A DNA stretch of 64,000 bases from Botryllus schlosseri (lineage: Eukaryota), in NCBI GenBank assembly GCA_051294905.1, contig CM119372.1, positions 30,256,001 through 30,320,000 of the forward strand. The letters run 5' to 3'. Shown here piece after piece: positions 24,950-52,521 of the stretch. The position numbers and the translations under genes are program-made. The notes under the pieces are model-generated. The model saw only the letters and a list, made by a program, of their open reading frames with translations, was not told the origin of the DNA and made no database searches. Each line of letters opens with the position of its first letter. The stretch's first letter is position 1.

Positions 24950-27900
24950 GTCTTGTTAATTAAAAAATAGTTCCTCTAATGCTAGAATCTATAATTCACC
25001 ACCAGAATAATATATGTTACATATTACTACAACCGACATTACACTGATATTTCTGTGCAATTTACAAACTACTCAATGCTCAACGATCATACCAACATTG
25101 GAAATTAAATCGATACTCATTAAAACGTTTCAAATAAACGTTATCACACTAGCTATACATTGAAGGGGTATGTGGCAGGATCTCAAACAGATTCATAAAA
25201 CCGGACAGCACATAGACCCTAAAATAACCGATGACTATAAAAATAATATCGTAGCTCCAAACATTTGCAGACCATCGAAGCAACGATGGTGTAGTACCAT
25301 TGTTAATACTGCGTATCAGCACTAAAATATAATCCGGTCGATTGCAAAAGAAATTTGGCAATCCCACTTCTACTGATCCATTCCAGCATTAGTTTCCGAA
25401 GCCCATGACATATGAAATCAATATAGACCAGGAACGCTGAACTAACCCCGTCACTGGTTGTCTAACTGCTATTACATTTTAAAACTACAACTCCTCAGTA
25501 CCTGAAAGCATATCAGCATTCGAGTCTCCGTAATTATAGTCTATTGACTATATATATATACAGTATATTCTGTATACTCGTCGGTTATTTGCTGCATCAC
25601 GTTCGAATTAGGACAAAGGTCGCCGAATAATGTCTAGTCACGATCCCTGTAGCCTGTAGGAATGCGTCACGATCAACATCTATTAGCTGGTTGCTTCCGA
25701 CATCTTCCGGCGATTTGGTATCATTGCCACCTTTTCCATGTGATTTTATCCAACGAGAATATGCAATTCCTAAGTCACTACGGATTACTGACTTTCGAAG
25801 ATCCGCATATATTCATTCACAACGTTTGAGCGCACACGGTATATATTGCTAACAGCGGATTTTCCATTGGCTCCGAGTTCAATTCAGTCCCAATACAGTT
25901 TTGTAAACATCGTATATCCGAGCCCGATCTAAATCCAGCGCTAAAATCGTCAAATCCTGTATTATTTTCTAATGCGAACCCAAATTCATGTTGGTATCTG
26001 CGAACTCTTCGCCAAGCTTTCAGAACCCTATCAAATATCAGTTCAACTTGATCAACGTGATCGGCGTGTAACCGTGGTAGATATCAGACATGGGGTAATC
26101 GCGATTAGTAATCGTAATCGATTACGACGATTACAGCACTTTCAAGTAATCGTAATCGCAATCGATTACATTCGAAAAAATTCCGAAGTAATCGTAATCG
26201 TAATCGACTACTTCCCATATCTAATCGATTTCTCGGGTCAAGTATACTAAGCACCGGCCGAGAAAGCCGGTATCAGTAGGGAACACGGGATTTGAGATGG
26301 CAGGTGTTGCAGTATATGTTGGTTTGTGTTTCACGTGGGCTGCGATTTGGCCCGGGCGTAAGTATATTTGCACTGTATACGGAACAGATAAACTTAACAC
26401 CCGAGATAGGAGAGAAGGTGCATTGATTGTGAGCTATCTGAAGAAGGATATCCGGGACTTCGTTAGGTCTGGACCAATCACGACATAAGCGCAATACCTC
26501 TTCTCACAAGGGGCGTCAATCAGCCAAAACTGAAACGAGCTATTGCCTAACAAAAACTAGGTAGGCTTCACATTACACTGAATTGCCTCATATTATGGAA
26601 GACAACGGTGAAATTAATCATACCGATCGTTTGCGCGCACATTTGATAATGGAGGGATCATATAAGGTAAGGCGAACAAATTTATAACCGTCATACTAAG
26701 TCTGATTTCACTAATAATAATATTTGTGTGCGTGCATTGTTATCGCAAGCATAAGTCCGCTTTCTCCGCAAGATATTTGCGAGTGATATTAGTGCGTAAT
26801 AATGCGAGAATGTGGGGCACAATAATTTCATTTCGCAGGAGGTCAGCGGTGAATATAATCATCATCATCGTTGATTTATTAGCAATTTTTGTCTGTTCAA
26901 TGCTCCGCGGAAATGTGATACAATGAAAAGATAACATTTTTTGCGCTTCTCGCGATTTACCATGACGTATAGTTACTTGATTTTGCGAAACCCACGAAAA
27001 TATATACGGCAGCCTAATATCGTATGAAACTGTTTTGATGCTTTAATCAGCGAGGGTGCACTGTGCAGCCTGTGGGACCGCGAATATTTTATATGGACCA
27101 GCATTTTTTGCGCTTGGCATTTTCACGTTAAGATACGCACGTTTCGGGCAAAATGCGACTGCTGCGTGTGCTGTATGCGTTGCCAAATGATTGGCGGCGA
27201 TAAAGCATCGAAATATAATAACCACCGCATGTTGGCCTAAACTTTCGACATTGAAATGACCGAAGCGGAGCTTGAGCCGCACGTCCCATATGAGATCCAC
27301 ACAAATAATGAGTCCCGTGTCGAAATGCGAATTTGAAATTGGGTTGGTCTCACGAAAGGATATATTATTTTGGTTTCGCCTGATACGTGTAAGCAATTCT
27401 CATGTGTCTGGAGCTTTGCCGCTATACCGCGATCTTTGGAGCTTTGCAGACAAATCTAGTGTCAGACCAATAGTAACATCAAACCAACTTGCATGGTATA
27501 GGGGTTGAGACATTTTTTATCATCAGGCCTTTTCTTCATAACATCTTTGATTGGCCTGTCGCTTATTGGCTATGGTACCGAACACAGTAGCCTTGGAAAC
27601 GATCAAGGTAACCACTGAAGATCGACCATTACGCGACTAAATTTAAAGGATGCACAATTGCACAATGCACATATTACGTACATTAGACGGCCTGTCCAGT
27701 GCGGTAAGGACCAAAATTTATACCTTTCACGGCCAATACTGTAAGAATCACTGGCGCAAACCAATGCCGTTACCAGCTGCAGATAGGTGGGCCGTGTGAT
27801 TCCTTACTTGAAACATTGAATATGACAAAATAAAATGGTTGGCACGCAAGTTGGTAATATTTTACATTTTTAGATATTTTGGCATGCTGCATACGAAAGG

Positions 27901-29999
27901 TTGCCGGCACCAGGACTGGTGTTTATTTAGTGGTGATTGCTTGTGTTTCGACTTGGGTGCGGGCATGCTCGTCGGGTGTCGGATGGCCGGCGGGATGCTA
28001 TTCCGCACGTCAGGTCCGGCATGCTTGATGGAGCGATGATCTTTTCGGTCGACCATGTGATGTTTGGGCGGCGTGCTGGACGCGCGTGTGTTGTGCTTGT
28101 GCGCTTTTGATTCCGAGGTGAAGGGGACATTGACGTGTTTGGGACGGCAGTGACCGCAGTGGAAGAATAACTATGAGTGTGAGCAATATGAGCCGATGGA
28201 ATTTATCGGCCATAACGAATATTGCTCACCAACTTGTGCAAATTCTAGAATAACGGCGAGACTTGAAAATATTGGGGTACATTAGCACAGAAATCACGCA
28301 AGCAATAATCGCGTGTCGATAATTTTTTGTTTTCTAGTTTGCTCGCTACTAGCGATTGTTATAAATAATTGATGAATATTCCGTTCGCGGTGAGGATCGT
28401 AAGCTTCGTCGTGCTGCAAAACTGTAATATCCGAATTCCTCAATATGCGCTGCAGGATGGGCTGTTATTTTGCGCTTGCTACTGTCGGATCGCTATAAGT
28501 AATTAATGAATATACTGCTCACAGTGATGATCGTGATTTTCGTTGTATTTGAGGCCTTTACACGGAGTACGAATTATATAATTCCTAAATTGCTGGGGGA
28601 TATTAATTCTACGATTATTACCGGCCCATATAATAGTACAACAAGAGAAGAATCAAGCTCGGTTAATAACTAGATACAGTGCATATCCACAAACAGGGGA
28701 ATTATTATGGCGTCTTTACGCCAAATACGACTCATGTTGCACTATACCATGGTGTCATGCGCACTAAAACCACATGGGGCCTAGGATCTGATATGTAAGT
28801 TTGTATAAATGCAAACTACTCACCAGTGCCCAATAACATAAGTCAATAATGCCCAAAATAGGTTTCTACCAGGGCGATATTATTCCATCAATGGAATGAG
28901 GCTTGAATTTCAGGGATCCAGACGCTTGATAAACGGGTCATAGCAGCGTCGGACATGCGATCCGCAGAATGATTTAATCCAATGCGTGAAGCAAGTTTGA
29001 GTATTATAAAATGTTTAACGCGAAACAATAACTTCATATTGTTAATTTATTCGCTAAAAGCTTTTCGACCTTCAGTGTTCCTCACAAAGCATGTTACGAT
29101 TGGCTGAAACTATATTACGATGTAGGAAAAAATCACTGCCTTGTATCTTTTGTCAGGGCCGTTGTTTTAGCGGAAGCAATAACTATATTTCCCTGGCAAA
29201 TCGTCGTATTGTGTGCAGGTTCTGTTGTTTGCGCGTAAACCTATAATATATTGGGGCTCGAGAAAGTAGCCAGAACCTTACGCTAGACCGGGTGTTGGCA
29301 ATTATTCTCCATCATGGGTCAAATCTGAAGCGGCAAAAACGGTGGTGGGCCGCAACAAAAGTCCAGACTATGGTCCGCGGCGTGAAGTTTCATCTCTAAA
29401 TTGAAAACAGAATTATATTGTTAACAAATGTCGCGAAGTGAATACTTAAATATTGGGCTGCGTCCGCAGCTCTGTGTGGCTTGGTAAAGTAGCCTTGCTC
29501 TTTTGCTAGCTGCGGTCGTAGGCGCGCATCAGCCGCGAGTATGTATTCACTGCATGATTTGTTATCATAATGCCAACTCAAATTATATTCATTGAGCTCT
29601 GAAATCTGCTCCATGCCCACTACACACCACCGCAGCTTTCGTTGCTTATCTTAACATTGTTTGTGGACGAGGACTGATCCACTAGATTACGGATTTGGAT
29701 ACATATGACTTCTCAAATTGAAAACCATTCTTACAATGCGTAATGTTACAATGCCAACCAGAAGGTTTTAATTGAACTATGTGGAAAGAGTGAATTCTTG
29801 TGTCTACAAGGCTGCTCAAACTTCGAAAAATACATTGCCTTTATTTTGAGTCTTAATTACGCGTCCCAAGTACGAGGACAGCATAATCTTGGCATAATAA
29901 TGAACATGCTCCAAGGTGAACTAGTTTCCTGTTTAATTAACAGTCTTTGATTTAGTCATACATAAATTCAGCCATGTCTGAGCCATCCCTGCGGTTTCC

Positions 30000-32900
30000 G
30001 CAAGGGTATTGGTGGACAGATGTCGTTGTCCGAACAGATGTTATTTTTCCCATGTTCTACTCCTAAGGGACCAGGATCATTACCATCTGTTAGGTGAGGT
30101 AATTACTTGCAGAATCAAGAATGGGGGATGTGCGTCAAAAGCTAAATATGATCTTTAATAAACACGGTGAATCCGGTAGGCCTTTTCCGAAGCGTAAACG
30201 TACCTTCTAAAAGCCTTTCCGTACACACCATCGTCTACGGGACATCCGGTTGGGTGACCGCGCTCATACAGTTGATCCCCTATAGCATATAGGGTAATGG
30301 TAGACTAACTAGAGAAATTTTCGGACAGTTTTCTGCCTGTCTAGTAATCGCGCCATTAAAGGTTTCCGTTCACTTCTTACTTGCCGTCCGACAGTCGACG
30401 AGCATGTCCGTTGTCCGCGTTCAGGTCAAAGTACAAGCAATTAAATACAGTCCATGCTCAAGATTACCGGACCACGACTGACCTATTCAATCGATCTCGC
30501 TTCCCATGACCTATTTATAGTCGCTTTCCCTTCTATACCATCTTACTTACCTTTATTCAGTGTGCATGCCTCCTCACTACATCGTCTAGGCCGAGGTGGG
30601 TGTCTGATTCCCAAACCACTTCGACATATTCCTATCTTTCCAATATAGCGCATTTTTTATGATGCATTGGACTGACGGAGTTGCTGGTAAACCAATTATG
30701 ATAACCAGAGGTGGTCAATAACGAACCTTTTCCTCTTTTGGTGGAATTTGGAGTGGCTTTTGCCTGCTCATACTATTTCAGTTTTATGGGCAGGAATAAG
30801 CGTGCAATGACTACTTTTTTTGGTCACCACTCCTATTTCTACTTGAGTAGAAGGCTCGACGCTACTTCTACTTGACCATACCACGAAAGACCTCGGAGTT
30901 GTATAGGCTGACCTCAAAAGAATCACACAATGCCGAAAAGCCGTCATTATAAGGAATTCAGCAAGCAATACTAAAATGAACACCTTTGGTGACGTCACAT
31001 TACACATGCTGCTCCTCGTGAACCATGCGTCAAAACCCTGACAAGGTATCTGTTAAAACAATGTGAATTACGCGTATGATATGATAGCCAATTTAATAAC
31101 CCGAAGGTAGTTGGAAAACTCTGGGCGGCAAACAATATTGACAGATGTGTTGGTTCTACTTTCATGTGATATGTTGTTGCTTGCAAATGGCGGATCTCGA
31201 GTTATAATAAATGGCGGGTGCAATGGGTTTAATTTGCAGGGTACTTTGCGACTCAAATAGCGAAAACTGCTTTAAAAGAAATGTTTGGGAACGGAATTAT
31301 TGCTACTTGATGTCAAAAAAAACAAAACAAAACTCATTAGATAGTCCGAGCTCAGTGTTTTAATTACATTAATACCGCTAAGAGCCTTTTAGAGGAGCTT
31401 TCAAATGCCAGTGAGTGATTAATAATTCAGATGCGGCCTAAGGTTAATGTGGATAATGTGTTGAGATTTTTTTCCAAATGACAGGTATGATTAATAATTC
31501 AAAAGCTAGCCAAAACTCGTGACAGATTCCCATTAATGGCCGTTGGTAAGACATCCATTACCAATAAATTATTCATAGGAAATCCAAAAATAAAACTAGA
31601 AAGCCTTGCCCTTATACAAAAAAAAAGGAATAATTGATTTAACATCTGCTTTGAAAAACTCTATATAAGACCACCGACAGTGGCGTTGTCAAAACAGTAC
31701 GCTAGAGTATCTACGAGGGCAGGATTAAAGACAGCTATACGGGCTTACTTATTGTGTTAGGGCGAAGCTATGCCCGATATTAGAATGATATTCTGAAGAC
31801 TAAACTGTAAGTCCATACGGATGTGCTGAAGGGGGGCCTTTGTTGTATAGGACATGCTGTTAGTGGGACTGGGCACAATGATTCTGGTACTCGAGTCTGT
31901 CTTCAAGTATTGAAACTGAAAGTTATTTTATCAAGGAGTATCACGGTTTCAACAGTACATTTTGCCGTGACATCACAATGAGTGATATTCAAACGCTCGT
32001 TCGACTTGAGCATAATGCATGATTCGGAGTTAAATCACTCAGGTGCTCAATCTTGCCCAGCCTTAGCTAGTAGCTATTAGTGGGGATAACGAATAAATAA
32101 ATGGGATAGCTGGTATCTATATCTTACGATCGGGATAGTCTAGCAAAGTAATAGGTGGGGCCATGCACGATGGGAACTATACTTTACATATCTTATCTGT
32201 GGTTTGGAAGAAACGTCACTCTCTTTAATACAATTAATGAAGGCGTTCACGAACAATTGGATTTTATTTACACGCCACGTACGAAAACAAAACACTGGCG
32301 TTTGGCACAACAAAATATTACTCAAGTTGGCCAGGACTAAAATACCAGGAAAAAATGCCCCGTCACATCGCTCGGGATGGTGAGATCGGGCAAATGCGTT
32401 CGGGATTCAGAAGTCCCGTCTTGCGAGGCCTGGAGTGTGCAAGGGTGCGTGATAGTCCTCCGGACGGGTTGATTTTCCTCACAAAGCCCATTGGTGGTCA
32501 AAACTTTTCATCGGTGTTGAAATCAAGGGTTTATTTTAATTCTCAGATTGGGGTCGCGTCCAGCTGGAGATGTTGACCCAGCAGAAGTTATGTCCCATTT
32601 TGAGATAGCTAAATATCAGTGATACCCTTTCAACTAAAATGCTGGCCCAATCATATGGGATTAATCCTTGGGGCTATGGGCACAGCGATTTTGGTACTCG
32701 ATCTGAATTTAGCATTAATTTTGGTGATTCGGGCCGAGTATTAAAATGGTACGCTTTTCGCCACTGGGTGTTCGATTAATTTGTTTATGTGCGCAGGGCG
32801 AATTGCTTTAAATGCTTATTGGCTGGTAAAGTCCATGATATATTTTCTGTGAAACCCTGTGAAACTGTCAAAAGTAGCACCTAGAAATCAATATCTGATT

Positions 32901-35900
32901 AGAGGTTATACCTAGGGTAAATGCCGGAGTAATCAGCTCATAAGACGTAGTATAGGGTGAAATCACAGGTTCAATGGAGTTTCTTTATCCAGCAAGTTTC
33001 CCGGTAACCTTCGATAATGTCTATGCGTTGGACAGGTAGTGTTTTACGGTGTCTGAGAGTTGTAAGTGTTTCCCAAACTACGGTTGCAGGTAGCACTGAA
33101 TGCATAGGAATTTTTTAGCCAAGCATATGTAGTAGCAAGGTCATCAGCGCTCTGCGTTCGGATACCGTATTAATAGTATCTAAACCATTTCATGATGGCA
33201 GGTTAATGTGCTTTGGGAGCGCAATTTTCATAATAAAGAACTGAACCTATAACAAGTTCGTTACAGTCGATACCTCCACAGATGATTATAATTTACTTGG
33301 CACTTACTCGGAAATTCCTTTCCGGCTATTATTGAAGTGGCATTGCATTTCTGCACTGTTACCGGAAGAAAGCAGTGTAAGTCAAACATAATTGCAATGA
33401 TAATCCATTATAATATTCGTCTTTTTTGTGTAAGAATCATGTTCTCGTTACAATTTTAGCTGTTACACTGGGGATCTGTATTGACGCAACAGATGCTGGT
33501 GAATACTGACCCCTTGTGGATTAGATTTATGAGTATGTCTAAGCAGGATGTTAACTGATTTGGTTTATGTTTCCGTTTTTATATAACACTGTTCAGCCGT
33601 GGGCTCTGTAAAGAGTGTTGGATTGAGAGTCAATTGTCAGCAAATAATTGAAGAAGCAGACTAGTGCATATGATAACTGGGTATTGTTTCTAGTCTAAGA
33701 TGTCATTCTACGTAACAAATAGGGATGGTGTGAACGTGAGGTTCACGTTCGCGTTCTGTGTGTGAACCTCGGAAATTTAGAGGTTCGCGTTCACAACAGA
33801 ACCTTGGTAGGTTCTGCACTGTGAACCTTTTTGGTGAATTGTAATTTGCACTTCATTATAAGATCTTTGGTTCAAATTTATTGCATTTCAACTGCGGTTC
33901 ACTCTATGCGTGGCGCTGGCAGCATAAAAAATCAACTCTAAACGAGCATGCACTTTGGCAACCTTAAAAGTTTTAGTTTTTTTTTGTTAAAAAAACTTTC
34001 TCGAAATATCCAGCTGCCGTTTGCGAATATTTAGTGACTCTCTGCTGTGAGCTTGACCCGCAATCACACAACATCACAAGCGATGTACGTAGTCAGCGAA
34101 TGATGCTTATGCAACCAATCAATGACTTTGATATCGTTTTCTGATGTAAAAAATCGAGCGGGCGTACGGGGTCAATCTTTACTTCATATCTTTACTGTAT
34201 CATTAAAACCAAATCCGTGCGATTGCGGTGTTGGCTACTGCTGTATAACTTGTTGTTTGCGGTATCGGTAGCGAGTATAGAAACCTGTTTTACACTCTGC
34301 GCAATATCACTGTTGGCAATAATCAGACTCCGAAGTCCTAACACATTGTCCGGTCTGGCTAAGACCGTTATGGCGTAAGCTTATATTCCCTGGTAAGCCC
34401 TCGTCGAAATTATTGGCAAAGCGACGGAATGTATTGATTTCATGCGATTATTATATCCTTTGATTACCGCGGTTGATACATTTAGCGACGTTTAGAACGC
34501 CAATATGTACTTCAGCAATGTGACAATATGTGGCCCGAGTCTTCGCTAGGTATCGTGTACAACTGTACAAGTGTACATTAATATAGGCTATCACTTCATT
34601 GAAATACAGGGTTGAAATTAGCAATATGACGTCACGTGACGTCACGAGGTTCACGTTCGTGTTCACACAGAACCTTTCGAAAAGGTTCGCGTTCACACGA
34701 ACCTGAACCTTTCAGAGGTTCACACCATCCCTAGTAACAAAGTCGAATTTCACACTGCTTGACCATTATGTTGGGTTTCTGATAGATTGGCATAATTAGT
34801 ATTTATGATAGAGCTAAGATAACATTTAATTATTAGAAAATGCCTGTATTTATTGGTAATATATTCATTGAAAATTTCACATTAATTTGTCCTTTTTTTC
34901 ACATTGGAGCATTAAAAAACCCATCTGCTTCTGATAGAACTAATTCAAATTTTGTTTGCCATAGCTGAAAGGCAGCTTACGATATCTGCGCCAAATTGAT
35001 TGTGGGCATTACGCACATGCATGCTCATTGTTCACTTACGACAGGAATTATTCTCACATGGCCCTACTCAACATTAGATGCTATGGCCATAATCCTCTGA
35101 CCACGAAAATCTGTGATGACAAGACCACTGTGAACTTGGGAAAGTAGCTTATTATGACTGAAATTACTGTCTTCTGAGGCTATAAAGTCTGATGTATGTA
35201 TATGGCTCGTGTTGTAAGTTGCAAAATAAAATGTACTTGTATAATTCCATATAGGCAAACACTAACTCATTATGATATACGGCATGTAGTCATGCAGTAT
35301 AGAAGTAATACAATCCTTATTTCGACTACGATACGGTGGCAGGATGACCATTGGGCACTATATATTGTGTCTGAAACTGGCTATACGTGGCTTGGGAAGG
35401 ATAAAACAAACCTTTAGCAGAAGTAGTGATTTGACTGGCAGCATTGAAGTCGGTGTGTAGTGCGGGGTACTGATGAAGTACAAGTTGCCTCATGCGTAAT
35501 GCTGGCGGCTGCTATGTTCTGAGTTATGTTTACATCAAGATTGCTAGACATGTCCACCGCGAGACATGCTCCAGATCCAGATTTAGAATATCCGTGTGAC
35601 ATTTAGGGAACTGACCGGTCTAAAGAAAAAGCACCATCTTGTAGGTATATTACTCATCGCGTTAGCGAAACTATAATTGATTGAATTTACTATTTTATTT
35701 TAATATTGATTGATATTTGATTTTAATTCTCGTTCTAGTAATTCATTTTGAAAAATTCACACGGGTCCAGCGGGTCGCTATACCTATGAATGTTGAATCA
35801 TAGACAATACTAAATGTGTTTACTGTTCAATGAACGACACTATTAGCTATGGCAGAATTGCAGGTTCACTAAATAATCTTTTATTACCGGTGTAGCTCTA

Positions 35901-39315: not shown

Positions 39316-40099
39316 GCACAGGACTGGAAATGCTAGATTATCCAGAGAAGCCTGGAAGACTAAATTAATAGGCACAGGACTGGAAATGATAGATTATCCA
39401 GAGAAGCCTGGAAGACTAAATTAATAGGCACAGGACTGAAAATGATAGATTATCCAGAGAAGCCTGGAAGACTAAATTAATAGGCACAGGACTGGAAATG
39501 ATAGATTATCCAGAGAAGCCTGGAAGACTAAATTAATAGGCACAGGACTGGAAATGCTAGATTATCCAGAGAAGCCTGGAAGACTAAATTAATAGGCACA
39601 GGACTGGAAATGATAGATTATCCAGAGAAGCCTGGAAGACTAAATTAATAGGCACAGGACTGGAAATGCTAGATTATCCAGAGAAGCCTGGAAGACTAAA
39701 TTAAAAGGCACAGGACTGGAAATGCTAGATTATCCAGAGAAGCCTGGAAGAATAAATTAATAGGCACAGGACTGGAAATGCTAGATTATCCAGAGAAGCC
39801 TGGAAGACTAAATTAATAGGCACAGGACTGGAAATGCTAGATTATCCAGAGAAGCCTGGAAGACTAAATTAATAGGCACAGGACTGGAAATGCTAGATTA
39901 TCCAGAGAAGCCTGGAAGACTAAATTAATAGGCACAGGACTGGAAATGCTAGATTATCCAGAGAAGCCTGGAAGACTAAATTAATAGGGACAGGACTGGA
40001 ATGCTAGATTAACCAGAGAAGCCTGGAAGACTAAGTTAATGGGCACGGGACTAAAAATGCTAGATTTTTCAGAGAAGCCTAGAAAACTAAATTGATAGG
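39316..40099. repeat. 56-bp tandem array, 14 copies
   Basis: Unit GCACAGGACTGGAAATGCTAGATTATCCAGAGAAGCCTGGAAGACTAAATTAATAG at exact 56-bp spacing from 39316; last two copies decayed. Confidence 0.97.
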
Positions 40100-40714
40100 G
40101 CTGACTGATAAAGTTTTAGGGTACACTCAATGATTATAGGCATCCCTATCTGGTTTAAATAAACTATGTTTATTAAAGAAATAATATATAACCTTAATAA
40201 ATAGATATATATGATAGCCTATATGTGTGGTAATAATGATGTATATACAATCGGAATATAATAGTATGGTAATTAGGTTAGAAAAGACCCTAGAACACAT
40301 AGGAAAGTGTACTACAAATAATATGATCTGAAAAATGGCAAATAAATTGGCCCCATCCACACATTTGTTTTCCGAAACAGATGTGTCGATGATCAAGAAC
40401 CACGTTAGTCATAGGTCCGCCCTGTCGACACATTCGTTTTACGAAGCGGGTGTGTCCACCGTTTGTTATATCGATATCTGTACATGATTTGGGACAATAT
40501 CATTTTAACGAGTTAATTTTTGTGCTATAGACGTAGGCATAAATTGCGTCATGAAGTACAAGTGTACATTCTCATTTTCGAAATTATAAGACAGATCAAA
40601 TACGATATCAAGATATTCTACACACCCGTGTAGTTAAGCTATCGTATTAAGCGATGACGGACATATTAATTCATTCCGCACGAGTTTGTCGAAAGCCGGC
40701 TCCGTCAAGCACTA

Positions 40715-41047
40715 ATGTACCGAGAGGACAACGAGTTATACAAGAAGATGGAATCACCACTCCACGATATCGCGATTCTCCTGGACAAAACGGCACCTAT
40801 ATTCCACCTTGCAATCGCCGAAATAGAAACGCAAATACGCGTCGCTCGAACCAGATTGTCAGAGGAAGATGCTAAGAGGATACAGTTGGACAACATAAGA
40901 TTTAGCAGAAGACACATAGAAAGGAGCCACCAGCAGACGATGAAATATTCATTTCACTGTGAACGATGTCGTACAAGACCCTTTGATACTACTCGATATA
41001 GTGCCAGTCGATTCAAATACACAGACTGCGCAACAGTCAAAGAGTAG
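40715..41047 (+). CDS. Helical 110-aa ORF, possibly the frameshifted N-terminal part of the RING gene
   Basis: Open frame with coiled-coil-like IAEIETQIRVARTRLSEEDAKR; overlaps the RING ORF, which lies in the +1 frame. Confidence 0.4.
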   Translation: MYREDNELYKKMESPLHDIAILLDKTAPIFHLAIAEIETQIRVARTRLSEEDAKRIQLDNIRFSRRHIERSHQQTMKYSFHCERCRTRPFDTTRYSASRFKYTDCATVKE

Positions 41048-41306
41048 GCTGGGCAACTCTGTTTATGCTAGAAACAGAATGGGGACGCCATCAATATTAG
41101 AAATAGCATATGTTGAAGAAATTGCTGAGAATCTGATGGTCATACAAGAAACCATACTTTGCAAACAATACAAAAATAATAGGAGCGAAATTACCCTGAT
41201 CCCCTGTGGACATCTGGGTCTGTGTCAAGAATGTTCGTCCGATGCTGAGCGCTGCATATTCTGCTATGGGAAAATATCGCAAAAGATCAAAGTGTATGGA
41301 GCTTGA
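40959..41306 (+). pseudogene. C-terminal IAP/Mdm2/neuralized-type C3HC4 RING, second Cys replaced by Tyr
   Basis: CKQY-x9-PCGH-x2-LC-x2-C-x6-C-x2-C..I..KIKVY*; TAC is one base from TGC. Confidence 0.75.
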
Positions 41307-42720: not shown

Positions 42721-42751
42721 ATTACTTCCGGTGTAGCACGTTGACCTATAA

Positions 42752-43141: not shown

Positions 43142-46087
43142 ATGCGAAGAATCTTGAAACTATTTAAAAAGAAGAAACCAACGGAGGCATCGGCGGAGCT
43201 AAAGCAGGGAATCCGACTGCTTAAATATACCCAAAAGCGTCACGAAGATTTGCGAGACCACGAGAGGCAATACGCTAAAGATGTGGCCGACCAGACAAGA
43301 GTCCTACAGGAGGTCAAAACGACCCTGCCTGAGGCAGTGAAGGAGCTGGAAAAAGCAAGAAAAGACGTCCGGCGGGCTCAAGCTGACCTGAAGGCCGTTT
43401 GTGACGCCACTTCAAAAATTACTAGAAAGGTTTCCCCTGACGTATTAAACGAGATCTTGCAGACTGAATTCGAGCTGGGTAAAGCCTATACGCAGGTGGT
43501 AGGAGAGAAACCGCCTCCTCCTTCCGCCCTGGCTGTCGTACCCTCAGCGCCTCTCCCGGCCTATGATCCACCAGCTATCCGTATGGTCAGGGAGACTCAA
43601 CCTATGCCCACCTTCACCGTGAAAAAGGGGCTGCATTGTCATACAGTAACGGCGGTCTACCCTACGCACCCAGACGCGAAGGCTGATGCCCCATCTCGAC
43701 CGACACCGGTTGCCCGTTCACTGATGGCTCCAATCTTTAGAACAAAAGGGAATATGCACCCGGCGATGAAGACCAAAGATGCTGCTAACACGCCCATGGC
43801 ATATTGGACACCTACGGGAGTGGCGACAGGAGGACCGATGAGACTGGAACGCGAAACAGACTCTGAATTGGACAGTAAACATCTGCCCTCATTCCGGAAA
43901 CTGGTGTCGAGATCTCGAGATGCGAAGGGTCAGCGGCGGGACATTGACAAGTTGGGTGATGCTGGGACACGAAGTAGTCGGGCAAGAAAGTCGCCGAGCG
44001 ACGCTGAGCACGTCATTTTCCGTGGAGAAGGGGAGGAGTATGATGAACGAGACTCGGAGGGTCAACCAGAAGATTCTGATTCTGAAAGTGCGACGACATC
44101 CCGACTGCAGAGGCTTGTACAGCAAATGGAATCCACACAGGACACCCTCCGGGAAGCTACTCGAAATGCTTTCCTTGGAGATAGTGGCGCTTCCCGAGAA
44201 ATTCTCCGTGGTCCTGAGTATTACGATGCGGGCTATCTTCCAAATGGCCGGGGGAATCCTGGAATGCCGCGTTTCGCATCTACTCCAGATGACAGTGATG
44301 ATGGCCGCCCAATTCAGCCGCTCTCGCGACAGATGGAGGTAATAGTAAACCCAACGCTAACTGCACCTGTTAGATTTCAGTCCGAAAAGGAAACGATACA
44401 GTTGATAATGGATCCGGGGGACATGCCTCTTCTCAAATGGATGGAGAACACAATGAGGCGAATTCACCACGGTGAAGGTAATACTGATGCTGATATAATA
44501 TTGATGAATGCAATGCAAAAGAAATTGAAGAATGCGGGGCGTTACAAACAAGCTGATCAACTTGGAAACTTCTTCAACACAAACTCAGGAAACGCCAGCT
44601 GGGAATCCGTTATGAGGTCGCTATCACTTTCCAACCCGCAAGGAATTGTGAACAATGAAAGAATTCTCAACGATTTCCGAAGAAATTATCATTGGGAAGA
44701 TGAACCCCTTCCTCTACTTAACAGCGCCCTGAAACCACTAGAGATAGACATGGACGATCTAGTTTTGGATAATCCGGACGGGCTGCGACTCTTCCGCAAT
44801 TTGAGACAGCAGCTGCCGGAAGCACTCAGGTTGATTATTCGAGGGTGGGAAGAACACACCTGGCGGAAAGTCGCAGAAGAACTACAACTGTTCTGGAATT
44901 CGGAATTCCAAGATGAACAGGAATCGAGTCCGACGTCTCAGAGAACCCGAAGAACGCAGAAGAACGAGTCGCCCTTGCCGCCTGTACATATCTATAATGT
45001 ACAGCCAGCTGGGCCTGTGGTACATAGCTATCCGACTCACCCTAACGGAGATGGACAACGGGAAATACCTCTACAGCCTACTTCCTCGTCATCACATCTT
45101 CCGCCGGAATTCGACGCAACGCCACCTCGACCTCCCAGAATCATCCCTTTACAGCCTATCAAGAATATAGGACAGGTTACACAACTACGCCGAAATCCTG
45201 TTCGCAACGCAAGATTAAACCGGCCCCCTACTAACGTATCGAGTGGTATCGAGCCAGGCAGACGAGCGCAAACTACTAGGAAAATGCTGGAACGAAAACA
45301 GAATGTACAAGGCGCCTCTGCCGGACCCGATACCCAACCTCTACATATTTCAGGGTCAGCACAATCCGGTCAACAACCAGGAACTTCAAGCCAAAGAAGC
45401 CCACGAACGGAAGGAACACAAGATTCTGGAGTGGGACCAGATAATACGCAAATCACTCCGTCAAACAGTCAGGAGGCTCGCCACATCGCGGAAAGCCAAG
45501 GTGAGAGGTACAATTTCCTTAGAAATGGTAATATATTTGCCCCATTAGGTTTGTATTTGAATCCTTCCCAGGGCCAGGCCCTTTCGGTATGTTATTATTG
45601 TAAGGCTCCCGGACACCAATCCCGGAATTGCATTGCCAAGTTTATCCTTTGGCTAAACAATGAGGTACTCTCTAGAGATAGCGAATTGGGGTGGGCAATC
45701 CGTAAACGGGTCCGACCGGTACCGCAGCGTATTAAGGAATCCGCTGAACGCAACTGGCGTCCGTTCCTTACTACCCATGGATTATTGACGATTTCAGACC
45801 TTGATCGGTATCTCATATCCCATGGTTCTCCCCCGTTGGCAGAAAGAACGAATCTATGTGAGGCCTATTATGATAGTATACCTAAAAACAGAGATAGAAC
45901 CCACTGGCACGATAGGGGCCAATGGGGTCCCAGGGGGCCACCCGCGAATCCAATTCCTAATAACGGCCAAGTAAACTGGATTGCGCCTTCATATAGACAA
46001 GAGCCGCGCCAATATGCCACCTCTTTCTGGACAGATGAGGAATTAGAACAAGGCTTACGCGTTTCAAAAAACGGTTGGGGGCGCTGA
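43142..46087 (+). CDS. gag: Gag-like polyprotein (981 aa)
   Basis: Basic N-terminus and coiled coil; PSAP at aa 134-137; helical Trp-containing capsid-like block at about aa 420-590; CYYCKAPGHQSRNC (CX2CX4HX4C) at 45590-45631. Confidence 0.85.
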   Translation: MRRILKLFKKKKPTEASAELKQGIRLLKYTQKRHEDLRDHERQYAKDVADQTRVLQEVKTTLPEAVKELEKARKDVRRAQADLKAVCDATSKITRKVSPDVLNEILQTEFELGKAYTQVVGEKPPPPSALAVVPSAPLPAYDPPAIRMVRETQPMPTFTVKKGLHCHTVTAVYPTHPDAKADAPSRPTPVARSLMAPIFRTKGNMHPAMKTKDAANTPMAYWTPTGVATGGPMRLERETDSELDSKHLPSFRKLVSRSRDAKGQRRDIDKLGDAGTRSSRARKSPSDAEHVIFRGEGEEYDERDSEGQPEDSDSESATTSRLQRLVQQMESTQDTLREATRNAFLGDSGASREILRGPEYYDAGYLPNGRGNPGMPRFASTPDDSDDGRPIQPLSRQMEVIVNPTLTAPVRFQSEKETIQLIMDPGDMPLLKWMENTMRRIHHGEGNTDADIILMNAMQKKLKNAGRYKQADQLGNFFNTNSGNASWESVMRSLSLSNPQGIVNNERILNDFRRNYHWEDEPLPLLNSALKPLEIDMDDLVLDNPDGLRLFRNLRQQLPEALRLIIRGWEEHTWRKVAEELQLFWNSEFQDEQESSPTSQRTRRTQKNESPLPPVHIYNVQPAGPVVHSYPTHPNGDGQREIPLQPTSSSSHLPPEFDATPPRPPRIIPLQPIKNIGQVTQLRRNPVRNARLNRPPTNVSSGIEPGRRAQTTRKMLERKQNVQGASAGPDTQPLHISGSAQSGQQPGTSSQRSPRTEGTQDSGVGPDNTQITPSNSQEARHIAESQGERYNFLRNGNIFAPLGLYLNPSQGQALSVCYYCKAPGHQSRNCIAKFILWLNNEVLSRDSELGWAIRKRVRPVPQRIKESAERNWRPFLTTHGLLTISDLDRYLISHGSPPLAERTNLCEAYYDSIPKNRDRTHWHDRGQWGPRGPPANPIPNNGQVNWIAPSYRQEPRQYATSFWTDEELEQGLRVSKNGWGR

Positions 46088-46108
46088 TTGATCCGGTAAA
46101 TCAGCTCC
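46066..46108 (+). promoter_or_regulatory. -1 programmed ribosomal frameshift signal
   Basis: A_AAA_AAC (46066-46072) in gag phase; after a 5-nt spacer, hairpin GGGG(C)GCUGAUU-loop-AAUCAGCUCCC; the -1 frame is open into ORF2. Confidence 0.85.
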
Positions 46109-48612
46109 CTGACACAATATTACCCCAACATGTTAAAACTGTACATAATGCCTCGTTACCTTTGTTTACATTCCTTGATTCACCGGACAACCCCCTACAA
46201 CCGTATTTCGCAGAATTATTCGGTGGGCAACTTTTATACCTAGTGGATACAAACACAGACACTAAATTTCTAGCCGATACTGGCAGTATCCCCAATTTGA
46301 TTATGAAAAGCGTAGTAAAAAATAAATATCCGAGAAGCTGGGCTGAACGACAGCCACTTGATATGAAATTGCGCGGAATAGGAGGCTCGTCCCGAGTCGA
46401 CTCTCTAGTAATAGTACCTCTTGACGGATTGCAAGTTCCATTTGCAACTGGTAAAGGAGTTCCTCTTAATATAGTGGGGCTAAAATGGATTGACAAAGTA
46501 CAACAATTACCGAGTATAGATACTGAATTTAAAACTCCATCTACTGTTAATGAAGAATTGTCATTGGCAACACTACATAGTATGGCTTTACGCGATAAAA
46601 AGGAAGGAACCAGAATTGAAAACAGTCCTTGCAAAACTGTGACCAAGGATGGGTTGGTGAAAGCTGCAGAACAGACAAGCGTCGAGACGGCAAGGGCCGC
46701 TGATGCTGGCGTCGAAGTGGCAAGGGCCGCTGACGCATACGTTGGGTCGGTAAACACCGCTGACGTTACAATAGAAAATAGAGACTCTTTAGGTGCCGAG
46801 CAAGGAAGGCCTGCTGACACCTGCCAAAATCGCGCCGAGCGAGGAAGTCCCGCTGACGCAAATGGAGTGCAAACTAATGAAGGAGGCTCCAATGATGAAG
46901 GCAAGATGAGCGTCGAGTTGGCAAGGGCCGCTGACGCAAACGTTGGGTCGGTTAACACCGCTGGCGTTACAATAAATCAAAGAGACTCTTTAGGTGCCGA
47001 GCCAGGAAGTCCTGCTGACACCAGTCTAATTCGTGCCGAGCGAGGAAGTCCCGCTGACGCGAATGGGGGTCAAACTAATCAAGAAGACCCCGAGGATGTA
47101 GGCAAAGCTGCTTGTCCAGATGACGGTAAGGCATCAGTGCGGAATGATCCCACCACAACCGCCGTCATGCCTACTTCACTCAATAATAGTTCCAACGCAG
47201 CTACTACTCATTATCCGGATATGAGTCCGGATGTGGCTAAAGAGGAGTCTGGAGATTTTAGGATGCAAGTCTCTCCAGAACAAGGGCCCCCGTCGGATCA
47301 AAGCTCCGGCGGCGTGACGTTAGGCGTGGGCACGCGCCGAGATCAGAGGTTAACACGAATAGGTAGGGAAGTCCCGCTGACGGAAAAAACCCTCGCCCTC
47401 TCCCCACCAACACCAGAACCCCGATTACCGCATAAGCCAAACAGAAAGGTAAACGGTCCGGTAAACACGTACGTCTTACAAGAGGGAACCAGTCCAGAGG
47501 TAAAAACTGAAGTTGAGCTCCTGTGCGCACAATCAGTAGAGCTAGCAAAATGGCCATATAAGCCCCTTGATTCAGCTACGCCAGAAAATACCATTATTGC
47601 CGACAACGTATGGCCAGAGGTCTATAAACCTTTTGCGACTGAGCGGGAAGATCTGCCATGCCATCTTAGCGCGCCCCAATCTATGAAGTACCAGTGCGAC
47701 AGGGAACTAGAATACCCATCAACTAAGCCATTTGTCTCTGGTCCCTCTAATTTGAAAGGGGGAAGCCATACCAAGGATTTACAAGAAGCTGTAACCGTGT
47801 GGTCAGCAAATATGGTGTCATGCGTGATGAAGCCAATAACGGAGAAGTACCAGCAGCACATAAAAGAACATGGCTGGGCTGATAGGAAAAATACAACAGC
47901 TATGGAGGTCTACATTTCTCTCGGAACAATGCAAGTATTCACGTCTGATGGATTGTCCAGATCATATTGGGTAGAAATGGCGGTAGGAGATGACGATCCC
48001 CGTGCTGCTAATCCGAAAAGGAAAGAAGTAACCCATATTTTGTGTGAATCTCAACAAGAAAGGGTGCAACGAACATTGATGTACCATTACAGGCATGCAG
48101 AGTGCCAAGACTCGACAAATGGATACCACCAATGGGAAAGCATCCATGCGATTGTACAAGGCAAACTGAAATTAAATTTTGAAATGACCGAAATAAAAGA
48201 CGTCTTGATAAGTTGCGATAGGGCTGTAGTCACAAGCTACGGTCTGGCCGCGCCACACCGACATACGAAAGGGTCGACTCCCCCCTACAAGGAGCACGGA
48301 GGTGACGGTATGCTATGTCACATGGCGACTGAATTGAACGCAAAAGTTTTCATGAATGAGGAGATCAAAAGGATGAACAGAAAGTTTGTTCATCCTAGCA
48401 AGTCAAAGACGACAAAGATGCTAGGCCGGAAGATTGTTATCAGCGTGAATGCGGCGTATCTGAAGACTGAAGGGGTGAAATTGCTACAATCTCCAAATCC
48501 CGATGTTGTGATTGTGTTGAACTTTGAGGAATTTGGCTGCACAATGAATTCAAACGGACAAAATCTAAACCCAGTAATTAGATATATGCTGAATCAGCAG
48601 GAGTGCATTTAA
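46075..48612 (+). CDS. Frameshift ORF2: retropepsin, repetitive linker, unknown domain and Tpt1/KptA-like 2'-phosphotransferase
   Basis: FLADTGS (DTG at 46276), flap GIGG, NIVGLKWI. C-terminal 190 aa has YRH, DRA, HRHT, LCHMAT, RMNRKFVHPS and VISVNAAYLKTEGVKLLQSPN. No YxDD or DDE motif. Confidence 0.8.
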   Translation: MGALIDPVNQLPDTILPQHVKTVHNASLPLFTFLDSPDNPLQPYFAELFGGQLLYLVDTNTDTKFLADTGSIPNLIMKSVVKNKYPRSWAERQPLDMKLRGIGGSSRVDSLVIVPLDGLQVPFATGKGVPLNIVGLKWIDKVQQLPSIDTEFKTPSTVNEELSLATLHSMALRDKKEGTRIENSPCKTVTKDGLVKAAEQTSVETARAADAGVEVARAADAYVGSVNTADVTIENRDSLGAEQGRPADTCQNRAERGSPADANGVQTNEGGSNDEGKMSVELARAADANVGSVNTAGVTINQRDSLGAEPGSPADTSLIRAERGSPADANGGQTNQEDPEDVGKAACPDDGKASVRNDPTTTAVMPTSLNNSSNAATTHYPDMSPDVAKEESGDFRMQVSPEQGPPSDQSSGGVTLGVGTRRDQRLTRIGREVPLTEKTLALSPPTPEPRLPHKPNRKVNGPVNTYVLQEGTSPEVKTEVELLCAQSVELAKWPYKPLDSATPENTIIADNVWPEVYKPFATEREDLPCHLSAPQSMKYQCDRELEYPSTKPFVSGPSNLKGGSHTKDLQEAVTVWSANMVSCVMKPITEKYQQHIKEHGWADRKNTTAMEVYISLGTMQVFTSDGLSRSYWVEMAVGDDDPRAANPKRKEVTHILCESQQERVQRTLMYHYRHAECQDSTNGYHQWESIHAIVQGKLKLNFEMTEIKDVLISCDRAVVTSYGLAAPHRHTKGSTPPYKEHGGDGMLCHMATELNAKVFMNEEIKRMNRKFVHPSKSKTTKMLGRKIVISVNAAYLKTEGVKLLQSPNPDVVIVLNFEEFGCTMNSNGQNLNPVIRYMLNQQECI

Positions 48613-49782: not shown

Positions 49783-52521
49783 ACAATTACCTACATGTAG
49801 AGCTGGGGGCACGTAATTCATAATTATAACCTCTGGTATCTTGTTATAATTACTTTAGTGTATGTTGTTAATTCGTGACCTCCGGTTTGTTATATAATCC
49901 AACACTGTAGTGGCTCAAGCGTAGCAGACTAAAAATAAATTTCGTGATACGCACAAACAAATTGTCATGTCTTTATATCTGACTGCATGTCTAGCAACTC
50001 AAGTTGTAAATTACCAGGGTCAGTGGCCACATTAACTACAAAAGGACTTGAAAACATTTTCATCATGGGCAAAAAAGCATTCTTTCCGTCAATGCGGCCG
50101 TTGAACTTAACAATCAAGTCAAATGATCTATTGGTTTGATGGTCAGATAGCGTTGTAAAACGTGTTGTAGGACCACCTGCACTTAATTAAGTCTGATGAT
50201 GAGCAGACTTAAATTTGAGTGACGATCCAAACGCATTTGAGTGTGAGCATACTTTTTGACGTGAGTTGAGTAACGAAATCGTTGCAGAGTAGAGAATCGC
50301 TACTCGACAGCAAAGAAATTGGTCTCCACCCTTAATTATGAACTCCAGATTCCAAGCCAAGCTAGTGTAATTTTTGAATATCAATTTTTTTGTTTCTTCT
50401 AAATTGATTTTATAATATTTTTGTTGGATTTTCCAACGTCAATGGGGGCCGCAAGTAGGCTAGCTCTGAGCCGCGGTTGGGAATCACTGATCTAGAGAGG
50501 ATTTTCCAGTTAATTAGATCTCTCGAAAACACTCTATAACTTATGTTGGTTTACGAAACACTTTTTGAGCCCCCTTCGAGCTCGCTCCCCACCCTATTGG
50601 GAAATTTGGGGCGCGGCAATTATGACCCTGGCAAGAATGCAAATCATTGGGCGCGATAAATTGACCTCTATAAAAATGGTCAATGGGTACATTATGACGT
50701 AACAAGAAATTGACCATCTCTTTTAAAGGAAGTTTGTTATCTCATTAGGCCTCTTCAGCGCAATCCATATATTGTCTTCCAACATAGCTTCTAAGATGCA
50801 AAATAAATGTAATCGTGAGTAATCGTGATTACTTTTCCAATGTAATCGTAATCGTAATCGACTACTTCCTGATTTTGCTGTAATCGTAATCGTAATCGTA
50901 ATTGCGTCATTCAGAAGTGATCGTAATCGCAATCGATTACAATCATGAAGTAATCACCCCATGTCTGGTAGATATTCCTCTGATTGAAAACATGGTACCG
51001 GTGGCTTTGCCTCCACCTAAATATTAGGACTAGTGTGTCGGTGACTCGTCATAATACAACGTCTACGCTACTATTATTGGAATATGGGAATGAATCGTGC
51101 AAATTGTATGTGCTTGTCTTGTATGTCCAGCAACCAGCAAGCTATTTTTGATGGAGGTATTATTTTCAAAAGATTTTATCACTCAACCAATTAATTTCAC
51201 TGCACTCGAGTAGTAATTCACGGCATTGCTTTTACTTTAGTGGCAACGAGGACTAGAAGAGGCTAGTAGAAAATGTATCGCAATGCCCCGTTCCCACGGG
51301 GAGATTATTCCGTCGCTATTTAGTTCCACAGCGATGTCGATATAGTAAATCAGAATAGCAAGTCCTGGTTGTCCGAATGTTATACACCAAATTCCGTAAT
51401 GTTCATTTAGTAGTAAATAGAAGGACAAGCGGACGAAATAGTTTTAGAGACGGCCGAGAGGCAATATTATATACATCACGAGCAGGCACCACACACCTAA
51501 CGGATACATACAACGTCACAATTACTATGCGCCCAAGGGCATAACTCTTTTCGATTGCCTGTAATAGGCGACCATATAAATATGCCGGTCACTTGCTGGA
51601 TCATACTCGAATTGGAACAAAGGTCATCAAAATATGGCGAGTCATGCAGAATTCGTCGTCATGCAAAATTAGTGGACTGTTCTCGACTAGACGTTTTCAT
51701 AATACGTTTTCAGTCGACAGTCGATTTGTGACTGTTGTTATGATACATCGTGTGCATTGCGAAATCGGAACCACTTACTTCTGAAATGTCAATACTGTCT
51801 CAAATGTTTATAAGCTCAAAAGTAATTAACCAATTGATATCACGCTGTTGCGTTCCGGCCTAACAATACGATAACACATTCCAAGGTGCAGCCTCGTATT
51901 TCTGGAGTGGAATCTGAAAGGAAACAGCAGAAGCCACACTGATTTGCAATAAATAATCATTATCATGTTTTTCGTTTTGTGTGACATTTAGTGGTTTTCT
52001 GCTTTTAATACTGTGTCGATGCCCGGTTCATTTTCTGTACCAGTAATCCATAGTAAAGTGTGTGTAGTTAGATATTGTGGTAATTTCTGTTTTTGTGACT
52101 CGCGAAAATTTGTGGATTGTAGGCTTGTAGATTAGCGTAAGTGTTCCGTAGCCCGTAGGTTACCATAAAGGTTATAATCACTGTCATTGGCCCAGACAAC
52201 TAGACAGGTTAAGCAATGCGTAATAATGGTCTTGCTACAAATGCCACATCGATGCATGGCTGTGATAGATGTCATAACTTCTAACGAATCTCGAGTAGGC
52301 GATAATATAAATGCGTCAGTTATTTGCTTCATCGTGTTCGAATTAGGACAAAGGTTACCGTAACATGTTGAGTCACGTTGGTCGTTGGAATGCGTCGTCG
52401 TGTAACATTAGCAGAGTGTTCTCGTGCTTCGTGCGGTAAGGCGTTGTGGATTTGGCATTTTTCAAGTGATTTTGGATTTGGTATTTTTGTTTCATTGATT
52501 ATTATAGGTCAGTGATTAATT

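What the first reader, a model, noticed from the sequence alone, without database searches (positions are those of the whole stretch)
26085..50967. One hAT TIR pair with an identical 8-bp TSD brackets 24.9 kb, including the Gag-Pro-Tpt1 unit
Seen: CAGACATGGGGT termini in inverted orientation, GTAATC subterminal arrays at both ends, and GTAGATAT directly outside each end (fits the Ac-type nTnnnnAn target). No partner end lies near either terminus, and I saw no flank homology suggesting tandem duplication. Inference: either a giant cargo-carrying transposon mobilised in trans, or a small MITE inflated by nested insertions. No transposase was found inside.
Basis: partly seen in the sequence, partly recalled or inferred. 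Interest (0 to 1): 0.78.

Follow-up and report, generated by a model that had tools for sequence, protein, structure and literature searches.

The report
Oversized non-autonomous hAT transposon copy
The two matching ends with the same 8-base flank are real and belong to an abundant hAT transposon family that is normally about 1.6 kb, so this 24.9-kb copy is an oversized member, probably swollen by later insertions, and of a kind already known from maize.

Summary
Observation confirmed. CAGACATGGGGT occurs twice in the window, inverted, at 26085 and 50967. Each copy sits next to a GTAATC array found nowhere else, and GTAGATAT lies directly outside both.

The family is real. One metagenome scan gave at least 120 loci from a related host. 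Of 54 two-ended copies, 46 have 8-bp flanks matching at 7/8 or better, with an nTnnnnAn target logo. One copy (L049) carries hAT transposase domains just inside the same terminus. Distinct two-ended copies have a median of 1.67 kb and a maximum of 4.6 kb. The larger ones are a 1.58-kb foldback core plus foreign blocks, two of which contain reverse-transcriptase pieces.

The window copy keeps only the arms (about 143 and 180 bp). It has no family core and no transposase. Three parts of its 24.5-kb interior can be identified:
- a 1,014-bp hAT MITE with its own 8-bp duplication;
- an intact gag/protease/Tpt1-like derivative of a retroelement, lacking reverse transcriptase and RNase H;
- a fragment of another MITE.

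About 17.8 kb remains unclassified.

I favour in-place inflation (0.52) over movement as one 24.9-kb unit (0.30). Settling it needs the same species' genome. This is a new member of a known kind, of modest interest.

The parts
26077..26084 (.). Left target-site duplication, GTAGATAT
   Evidence: Directly outside the left terminus and identical to 50968-50975. T at position 2 and A at position 7 fit the family logo.
26085..26227 (+). Left arm: 12-bp terminal inverted repeat (26085-26096) plus a subterminal array of 11 GTAATC/GATTAC hexamers
   Evidence: It matches family copies at 77-93% up to 26227 and the family profile at positions 1-115 / 1459-1577. Alignment A5 shows the homology stopping near 26230.
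31956..32062 (-). 107-bp fragment of the MITE family that has full copies at 5921-6436 and 59432-59935
   Evidence: Self-BLAST, 77% identity to 5924-6032. The full copy at 5921-6436 has the 8-bp duplication TGCGCGAG.
33720..34733 (-). Nested 1,014-bp hAT-type MITE ('R1'), inverted repeat TAGGGATGGTGTGAAC, with its own 8-bp duplication GTAACAAA (33712-33719 and 34734-34741)
   Evidence: Other copies are at 13718-16037 (itself interrupted) and 52522-53826, 83-89% identical.
39316..40099 (.). Tandem array, 56 bp x 14, 96% matches
40670..41306 (+). Two adjacent open frames, a coiled-coil-like piece and a C-terminal RING finger whose second cysteine is replaced. Probably a decayed gene copy.
   Evidence: zf-C3HC4_3 at E = 5.5e-9 on 40959-41306. 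Translations. The two frames were searched apart and not joined.
43142..46087 (+). ORF1, 981 codons, gag-like, with one CCHC zinc knuckle
   Evidence: It is homologous to the gag ORFs of related retroelements in L124 and L125 (tblastn E = 8e-33 and 5e-19).
46075..48612 (+). ORF2, 845 codons, in the -1 frame relative to ORF1: aspartic protease (ADTGS motif), a low-complexity middle with a 201-bp tandem duplication, and a Tpt1/KptA-like C-terminus. The reverse transcriptase and RNase H of full-length relatives are absent.
   Evidence: Full-length relatives P0125-P0127 are protease-RT-RNaseH-Tpt1 proteins. About 410 residues of their pol have no counterpart here.
50788..50967 (-). Right arm: 12-bp terminal inverted repeat (50956-50967) plus a subterminal array of 12 hexamers
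   Evidence: (profile positions 1427-1577), and alignment A6.
50968..50975 (.). Right target-site duplication, GTAGATAT

Best explanation
A short, arms-only, non-autonomous hAT element inserted at GTAGATAT about 1.1 kb from an FSP1-like gene. A hAT transposase supplied in trans cut the target with an 8-bp stagger, which produced the duplication. The DNA between the arms then grew in place to 24.5 kb through later insertions. These include at least a 1-kb hAT MITE, a retroelement derivative that has gag, protease and a Tpt1-like domain but no reverse transcriptase, and further material I cannot classify.

Shown: the ends, the duplication, family membership, the nested MITE, and the retroelement origin of the two long ORFs. 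Inferred: the order of events, and that the unresolved 17.8 kb also arrived by insertion.
For: (1) The ends belong to a mobile hAT family. At least 120 loci carry the terminus. Of 54 two-ended copies, 24 have perfect and 22 have 7/8 8-bp duplications. The target logo is nTnnnnAn. hAT transposase domains lie inside a copy with the same terminus.
(2) Family precedent for inflation. Among 45 distinct two-ended copies the median is 1,673 bp and the maximum 4,592 bp. Eleven hold a foreign block of at least 500 bp set into an otherwise continuous 1.58-kb core. The blocks in L122 and L013 contain RVT_1 pieces. A further RVT_1 piece lies in the interior of one of the unpaired copies L019 or L069; the pooled scan does not say which.
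(3) Arms of 100-160 bp around unrelated DNA exist as two-ended copies: L123 (785 bp) and L062/L073 (1,006 bp, 7/8 duplication). A progenitor of a few hundred bp is therefore realistic.
(4) Independent insertions are visible inside the window copy: R1 with its own perfect 8-bp duplication, and the RT-less retroelement derivative. A second copy of that derivative in a related species (L126, 89% identical) spans the same RT-less junction, has dN/dS 0.98 and carries an in-frame stop. That marks a multi-copy element moved in trans, and the window copy, with 1,826 open codons, is young.
(5) In maize, Ds elements reach 12.7 kb in exactly this way (PMC3260210).
Against: - Only about 6.6 kb of the 24.5 kb can be assigned to mobile elements.
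- No LTR pair, and no other inverted-repeat-plus-duplication pair, was found in the interior.
- No reverse transcriptase, integrase or transposase remnant was found there.
- The family core (profile positions 150-1427) is absent, so continuity of an interrupted element cannot be shown.
- The foreign block is about 8 times the largest seen in the two-ended relatives, although contig length there limits what could be seen.
- A decayed RING-finger frame, a satellite and an old MITE fragment look like ordinary intergenic DNA. They sit awkwardly beside a perfect 8/8 duplication and 12/12 inverted repeat. That dating argument is weak, because R1 shows the same contrast.
Confidence: 0.52

Rival explanations
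1. The whole 24.9 kb moved as one unit. A hAT transposase acting in trans used the two outer arms and inserted everything between them at GTAGATAT. This would be a giant non-autonomous element: either a copy that had already been inflated elsewhere, or host DNA caught between two one-ended fragments of the family.
For: - Perfect 8/8 duplication, perfect 12/12 inverted repeat, and full hexamer arrays on both arms, so the structure is competent for mobilisation.
- The interior looks like ordinary non-coding DNA of this region: similar G+C, a MITE, an old MITE fragment, a satellite and a decayed RING frame. Most of it has no recognisable element boundaries.
- Size alone is no bar in this superfamily: maize Ac/Ds pairs have moved up to 100 kb (PMC3260210).
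- One related contig (L019) shows two family ends facing away from each other with the same 8-mer outside both. That is a footprint expected from transposition using ends of separate elements.
Against: - No internal family termini exist, as a pair of complete elements would leave.
- No second copy and no donor is known.
- In the sampled relatives every large copy that could be read end to end is a family core plus an inserted block.
- Natural large Ds elements are mostly explained by nested insertions.
- The young retroelement derivative would force the transposition to be very recent.
Confidence: 0.3
2. A short foldback copy was broken between its arms, and the break was repaired with a large piece of unrelated DNA by templated or end-joining repair rather than by transposition. 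Later insertions then added to it.
For: - The family core is a near-complete palindrome: the profile hits both strands over the full length.
- Symmetric central deletions exist, such as the 462-bp copies with arms of 230 and 231 bp.
- Several relatives are interrupted close to the centre of symmetry: L122 at about 745/770, and the half-copies L014, L032 and L065 starting at 780.
- The window's arms are of roughly equal length in profile coordinates, about 149 and 150.
Against: No junction microhomology or filler signature was identified. A repair insertion of about 24 kb would be unusual (my own knowledge, not tested). The near-symmetry may only reflect where conservation of the arms ends.
Confidence: 0.13
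3. Two unrelated solo ends that share a flanking 8-mer by chance, or an assembly join.
For: Solo or unpaired ends are common in the related contigs.
Against: The probability of identical 8-mers is about 1e-4 to 1.5e-5. Orientation and position of the flanks are exactly those of one insertion. There are no N runs in the window.
Confidence: 0.03

Closest known systems
Maize Ds and Ds-like elements enlarged by nested insertions (for example Ds2-13, 12.7 kb; Ds-l4 elements with filler DNA) - PMC3260210
   Same: hAT superfamily. Short inverted repeats, subterminal repeats and 8-bp duplications. Non-autonomous copies share only the ends with the autonomous element. Modal length is 1-1.4 kb, and a minority is enlarged by retrotransposons or other transposons (compared).
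   Different: The host is an animal, probably a tunicate. The inverted repeat and the GTAATC hexamers are unrelated to Ac. The family core is a long foldback. At 24.9 kb this copy is about twice the largest Ds cited, and most of its interior is not yet assigned to elements.
Ac/Ds macrotransposons and alternative transposition in maize (cited in PMC3260210 and PMC9910405)
   Same: Outer ends of the same family flank tens of kb and carry one 8-bp duplication. L019 in the related species shows a reversed-ends-like footprint.
   Different: A macrotransposon made of two complete elements keeps the inner termini. None is present here. No transposition of this unit has been observed.
Teratorn of medaka (a piggyBac transposon fused to a herpesvirus; PMC10175614)
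   Same: A cut-and-paste transposon whose ends enclose a virus-like or retroelement-like module.
   Different: Teratorn is 180 kb, multi-copy, carries its own transposase, and the fusion is shown by repeated copies. Here there is a single copy, no transposase, and the retroelement module is more simply a later insertion. I saw only the title and abstract of that paper.

Membership tests
hAT superfamily, non-autonomous member | 8-bp target-site duplication | tested here: met
   The window has 8/8 identical flanks. In the family, 24 of 54 two-ended copies are perfect and 22 are 7/8.
hAT superfamily, non-autonomous member | Target preference nTnnnnAn (Ac-type; the assignment of this logo to Ac-type hATs is from memory) | tested here: met
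   Across 35 distinct sites, T at position 2 is 69% and A at position 7 is 66%. GTAGATAT fits.
hAT superfamily, non-autonomous member | A transposase with the hAT C-terminal dimerisation domain associated with the same termini | tested here: met
   Met for the family, not for the window copy. L049 has the terminus at 3560, then DUF4371 (4633-5142, E = 1.1e-17) and Dimer_Tnp_hAT (5715-6296, E = 2e-9) on the same strand. The pieces were searched apart and not joined. The right end is missing from that contig. The window has no transposase.
hAT superfamily, non-autonomous member | Short terminal inverted repeats of the (T/C)A(A/G)NG type (motif recalled from memory) | tested here: inconclusive
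   The inverted repeat is 12 bp and perfect. CAGAC matches four of the five motif positions, with C where G is expected.
hAT superfamily, non-autonomous member | Clusters of short subterminal repeats (presumed transposase binding sites) | tested here: met
   Each arm has 11-12 GTAATC/GATTAC hexamers, found nowhere else in the window and conserved across family copies (alignments A5 and A6). Binding was not tested.
Small element inflated by nested insertions | The interior resolves into insertions with their own boundaries and duplications | tested here: inconclusive
   R1 does so (33720-34733, 8-bp duplication). The retroelement derivative is identified but its ends are not. About 17.8 kb is unresolved.
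Small element inflated by nested insertions | The host element's own sequence continues across the insertions | tested here: not met
   Only the arms match. Profile positions 150-1427 are absent from the window. This test does not apply if the progenitor was an arms-only derivative like L123 or L062.
Macrotransposon (two elements plus the DNA between them) | Inner termini of the two component elements are retained | tested here: not met
   There is no further terminus at up to 1 mismatch and no further arm found by the profile.
Giant cargo transposon (moves as a unit) | The same ends enclose the same interior at other loci with different duplications, or an empty site exists in other haplotypes | not testable with these tools
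   The window's species is not in the protein or contig collections. The 120 loci come from a related species: they lack R1 and any interior match.
Gene-capturing transposon (Pack-type) | Host gene fragments with introns, copied from a parent gene | tested here: inconclusive
   The only non-element Pfam hit in the interior is a decayed RING-finger frame. No parent gene could be sought.

The most novel reading that the evidence does not exclude
The 24.9-kb unit is a mobilisable hAT vehicle. In that reading, a cut-and-paste transposon's ends carry, as a unit, an intact capsid-like (gag), protease and Tpt1-like module from a rare retroelement lineage. That would be a DNA-transposon/retroelement chimera spreading a reverse-transcriptase-less module by transposase rather than by reverse transcription.
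Probability: 0.08. Interest if true: 0.7.

Novelty: new member of a known kind. Interest (0 to 1): 0.3.

Why it matters
The finding documents an abundant foldback-type hAT family in what is probably a tunicate lineage. The family has a clear target logo, a candidate transposase-bearing copy, and one copy fifteen times the usual size.

If that copy moved as a unit, it would be a natural animal example of hAT-mediated movement of tens of kb. Until now this is known mainly from maize genetics and engineered vectors. If it was inflated in place, which I think more likely, it is an ordinary nesting site. Its main use is then as an annotation warning: the gag/protease/Tpt1 unit should be treated as a separate retroelement insertion, not as transposon cargo.

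Tried and rejected
**Searches for the same species or for other copies**
- Exact look-up of the flanking FSP1-like protein, to find other haplotypes or an empty site: not on record.
- Word search with ORF2: no hits. The exhaustive search was therefore used.
- Viral-contig scans for the terminus pattern and for ORF2 relatives: nothing.
- Matching unpaired family ends across contigs by their outer 8-mers, to find other giant copies: only L019, which is in reversed order.
- Literature look-up of the sample identifiers: nothing.

**Searches for structure inside the interior**
- A breakpoint duplication between the two arms: the output was dominated by array self-matches. The only non-array repeat was an 11-mer with no terminal structure.
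- LTRs around the gag/protease/Tpt1 unit: none.
- A first relaxed inverted-repeat-plus-duplication scan timed out. The rerun found only R1, plus one doubtful 7-bp/11-of-13 pair at 31306-35539.
- A 28-nt imperfect inverted repeat at 27960/30383: no duplication, left unassigned.
- Rfam and tRNA scans for SINE-like parts: nothing.
- PDB sequence searches of ORF1 and ORF2: nothing significant.

**Argument rejected**
- Dating the insertion from perfect duplications against the divergence of nested repeats. R1 itself is 83-89% identical to its sister copies yet has a perfect duplication and inverted repeats, so copy divergence does not measure time since insertion.
Full report
**1. The observation**

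The 12-mer CAGACATGGGGT occurs exactly twice in the window, at 26085-26096 on the plus strand and 50956-50967 on the minus strand. This holds even with one mismatch allowed; the chance expectation is 0.18. GTAGATAT lies immediately outside each copy, at 26077-26084 and 50968-50975.

Arrays of GTAATCG repeats are confined to the 120-160 bp next to the two termini: 12 hits against 0.02 expected. Each arm has 11-12 hexamers. A scan of the whole window for a perfect 10-mer inverted repeat with identical flanks recovers this pair among five hAT-style elements with exact 8-bp duplications.

Past the 12-bp inverted repeat the arms are not simple mirror images. Most hexamers, and a 35-nt unit, have the same orientation at both ends.

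No other end of this family exists in the window. The flanks share only a weak 64-176-bp similarity that is not a duplication of the site. The window has no N.

**2. The family**

One metagenome scan used the terminus plus a conserved subterminal word. One further copy sits in a 1.6-kb contig labelled as a Kluyvera MAG, which I take to be eukaryotic contamination.

In these loci I found 54 two-ended copies. Twenty-four have perfect 8-bp duplications and 22 have 7/8. Thirty-five distinct sites give T at position 2 (69%) and A at position 7 (66%). GTAGATAT fits this logo.

After removing the same site seen in several samples, 45 two-ended copies have a median length of 1,673 bp and a maximum of 4,592 bp. 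A profile built from 25 copies of 1.3-1.7 kb shows a conserved 1,577-position core. The core is a near-complete foldback, because the profile hits both strands over the full length. Median pairwise identity is 80%.

Eleven copies hold a foreign block of at least 500 bp set into this core. The blocks of L122 and L013 contain reverse-transcriptase pieces.

Derivatives that keep only 100-160-bp arms around unrelated DNA also exist: L123 at 785 bp, and L062/L073 at 1,006 bp. So do unpaired arms-only ends with several kb of non-family DNA: L019, L049, L069 and L008. One reverse-transcriptase piece lies in the interior of L019 or L069; the pooled scan does not say which.

**3. Superfamily**

L049 carries the terminus at 3560 with only about 75 bp of recognisable arm. 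One to 2.7 kb further in, on the same strand, it has open pieces matching DUF4371 (E = 1.1e-17) and the hAT dimerisation domain (E = 2e-9). The right end of that copy is not in the contig.

Together with the 8-bp duplications and the target logo, this places the family in the hAT superfamily. The first five bases, CAGAC, match four of five positions of the hAT terminal motif as I recall it.

**4. What the window copy contains**

Only 26085-26227 and about 50788-50967 match the family, by BLAST at 77-93%, by the profile, and in alignments A5 and A6. Nothing in the window matches the core, profile positions 150-1427, even with all filters off.

Pfam scans of 73 stop-to-stop pieces of the interior gave one hit, a RING finger at 40944-41303. 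The 148 pieces outside the bracket gave only two FSP1-like genes. No transposase is present.

The interior holds the following:
- a 1,014-bp hAT MITE (R1, 33720-34733) with its own perfect 8-bp duplication, and sister copies in both flanks;
- a 107-bp fragment of a second MITE family (31956-32062);
- a 56-bp x 14 satellite;
- the decayed RING-finger frames, searched as two separate frames and not joined;
- two long ORFs, 43142-46087 and 46075-48612.

The rest, about 17.8 kb, has no Pfam, Rfam or tRNA hit. It has no internal LTR or inverted-repeat pair with a duplication. It has no nucleotide or translated match to the 0.9 Mb of related loci.

**5. The two long ORFs**

The word search found nothing for ORF2, so I used the exhaustive search. 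It found only 31 relatives among 1.84 billion representatives.

The full-length relatives are protease / reverse transcriptase / RNase H / Tpt1-like polyproteins. In L125 the polyprotein is preceded by a gag ORF and followed by an ORF with an alphavirus-E1-like domain.

The window's ORF1 and ORF2 align to their gag and to the protease and Tpt1-like parts of their pol. About 410 residues that include the reverse transcriptase and RNase H have no counterpart.

A 1-kb contig from a related species (L126, sample SRR25569784) is 89% identical to 47660-48510 and spans the same junction. It has dN/dS 0.98 and an in-frame stop.

The unit is therefore a multi-copy, neutrally decaying, non-autonomous retroelement derivative. 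The window copy, with 1,826 open codons, is a recent arrival. ORF1 and ORF2 were always searched apart.

**6. Host**

The flanking gene at 23810-24949 is an FSP1/AIFM2-like oxidoreductase. Its best named relative is from Styela clava at 53% identity, so the host is probably a tunicate. This is an inference.

The species itself is not in the collections. Sample SRR25569784 holds an 89-90% identical ortholog of the neighbouring paralog. The metagenome loci lack R1 entirely, so they come from a related species, not the same one. No contig looked human.

**7. Weighing the explanations**

Chance or misassembly is very unlikely. The probability of identical flanks is about 1e-4 or less.

In-place inflation of an arms-only copy is favoured, at 0.52. 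It is the demonstrated way this family's large copies arise. Two independent mobile insertions are visible inside the window copy. It is also the usual explanation for long Ds elements in maize.

Movement of the whole 24.9 kb as a unit (0.30) is not excluded. The ends are perfect and complete, and most of the interior looks like plain intergenic DNA without element boundaries. The superfamily can move such sizes, and L019 hints at transposition using ends of separate elements in this family. Against it, there are no inner termini and no second copy is known.

Repair-mediated insertion at the centre of a fragile foldback (0.13) is suggested by the palindromic core and by symmetric deletion derivatives. 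It lacks direct evidence.

**8. Novelty**

Both mechanisms are known for hAT elements, so this is a new member of a known kind. The more unusual item is the retroelement lineage with a Tpt1-like domain, which is a separate finding.

Noticed in passing
window 43142-48612; L124; L125:721-12904; L126: The gag/protease/Tpt1 unit belongs to a rare retroelement lineage, with 31 relatives among 1.84 billion representatives. Full-length members encode protease-RT-RNaseH-Tpt1/KptA-like polyproteins. No integrase domain was reported for them. In L125 the polyprotein is followed by an ORF with an alphavirus-E1-like (class II fusion) domain. The window copy lacks RT and RNase H but both its ORFs are open. 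The copy in SRR25569784 shares that junction and decays neutrally (dN/dS 0.98).
   Followed up: partly
L019:7764-7937 and 13516-13612: Two family ends face away from each other, 5.57 kb apart, each with GTTGCGAA on its outer side. This is the footprint expected from reversed-ends (alternative) transposition, or from a tandemly repeated unit carrying the element. Chance is unlikely, at about 1.5e-5 per pair.
   Followed up: partly
L123 (NZ_JBKDZH010000047.1, 1,641 bp, labelled MAG: Kluyvera sp.): A bacterial MAG contig carries a two-ended 785-bp copy of this eukaryotic hAT family. It is almost certainly host-DNA contamination of the bin.
   Followed up: no
window 8465-9604 and 23810-24949 (both minus strand): Two uninterrupted 379-codon FSP1/AIFM2-like genes lie 15 kb apart and are 79% identical in DNA. 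A related species has an 89-90% identical ortholog of the first (L001) and a third paralog at 64-67% protein identity (L002).
   Followed up: partly
window 5921-6436, 6605-7012, 56484-57107; also 54025-55690: Three further small hAT-style MITEs have exact 8-bp duplications: 516 bp (TAGGGCTGGGCA), 408 bp (CAGTGGTTCCCAAC) and 624 bp (CAGGGTTGCCAT). There is also a 1.7-kb foldback. The region is MITE-rich and has no transposase.
   Followed up: partly
L022, L057, L059 (462 bp) against the 1.58-kb core: The family core is a near-perfect long palindrome. The 462-bp copies are symmetric central deletions (arms of 230 and 231 bp), as expected from hairpin or cruciform processing.
   Followed up: partly
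window 9667-12352 against L001:417-527: Upstream of the first FSP1-like gene the window has about 2.7 kb that the related species' contig lacks. The flanking non-coding DNA is about 77% identical between them.
   Followed up: no
window 25579-25747, 51583-51646, 52314-52473: A short repeat (68-83% identity) occurs once in the left flank and twice in the right flank of the big element, always on the same strand. Its nature is unknown.
   Followed up: no
window 13718-16037: The left-flank copy of R1 is itself split by an insertion of about 1.4 kb (14339-15728). The right-flank copy carries an extra block of about 250 bp (53021-53267). Nesting is therefore common in this region.
   Followed up: partly
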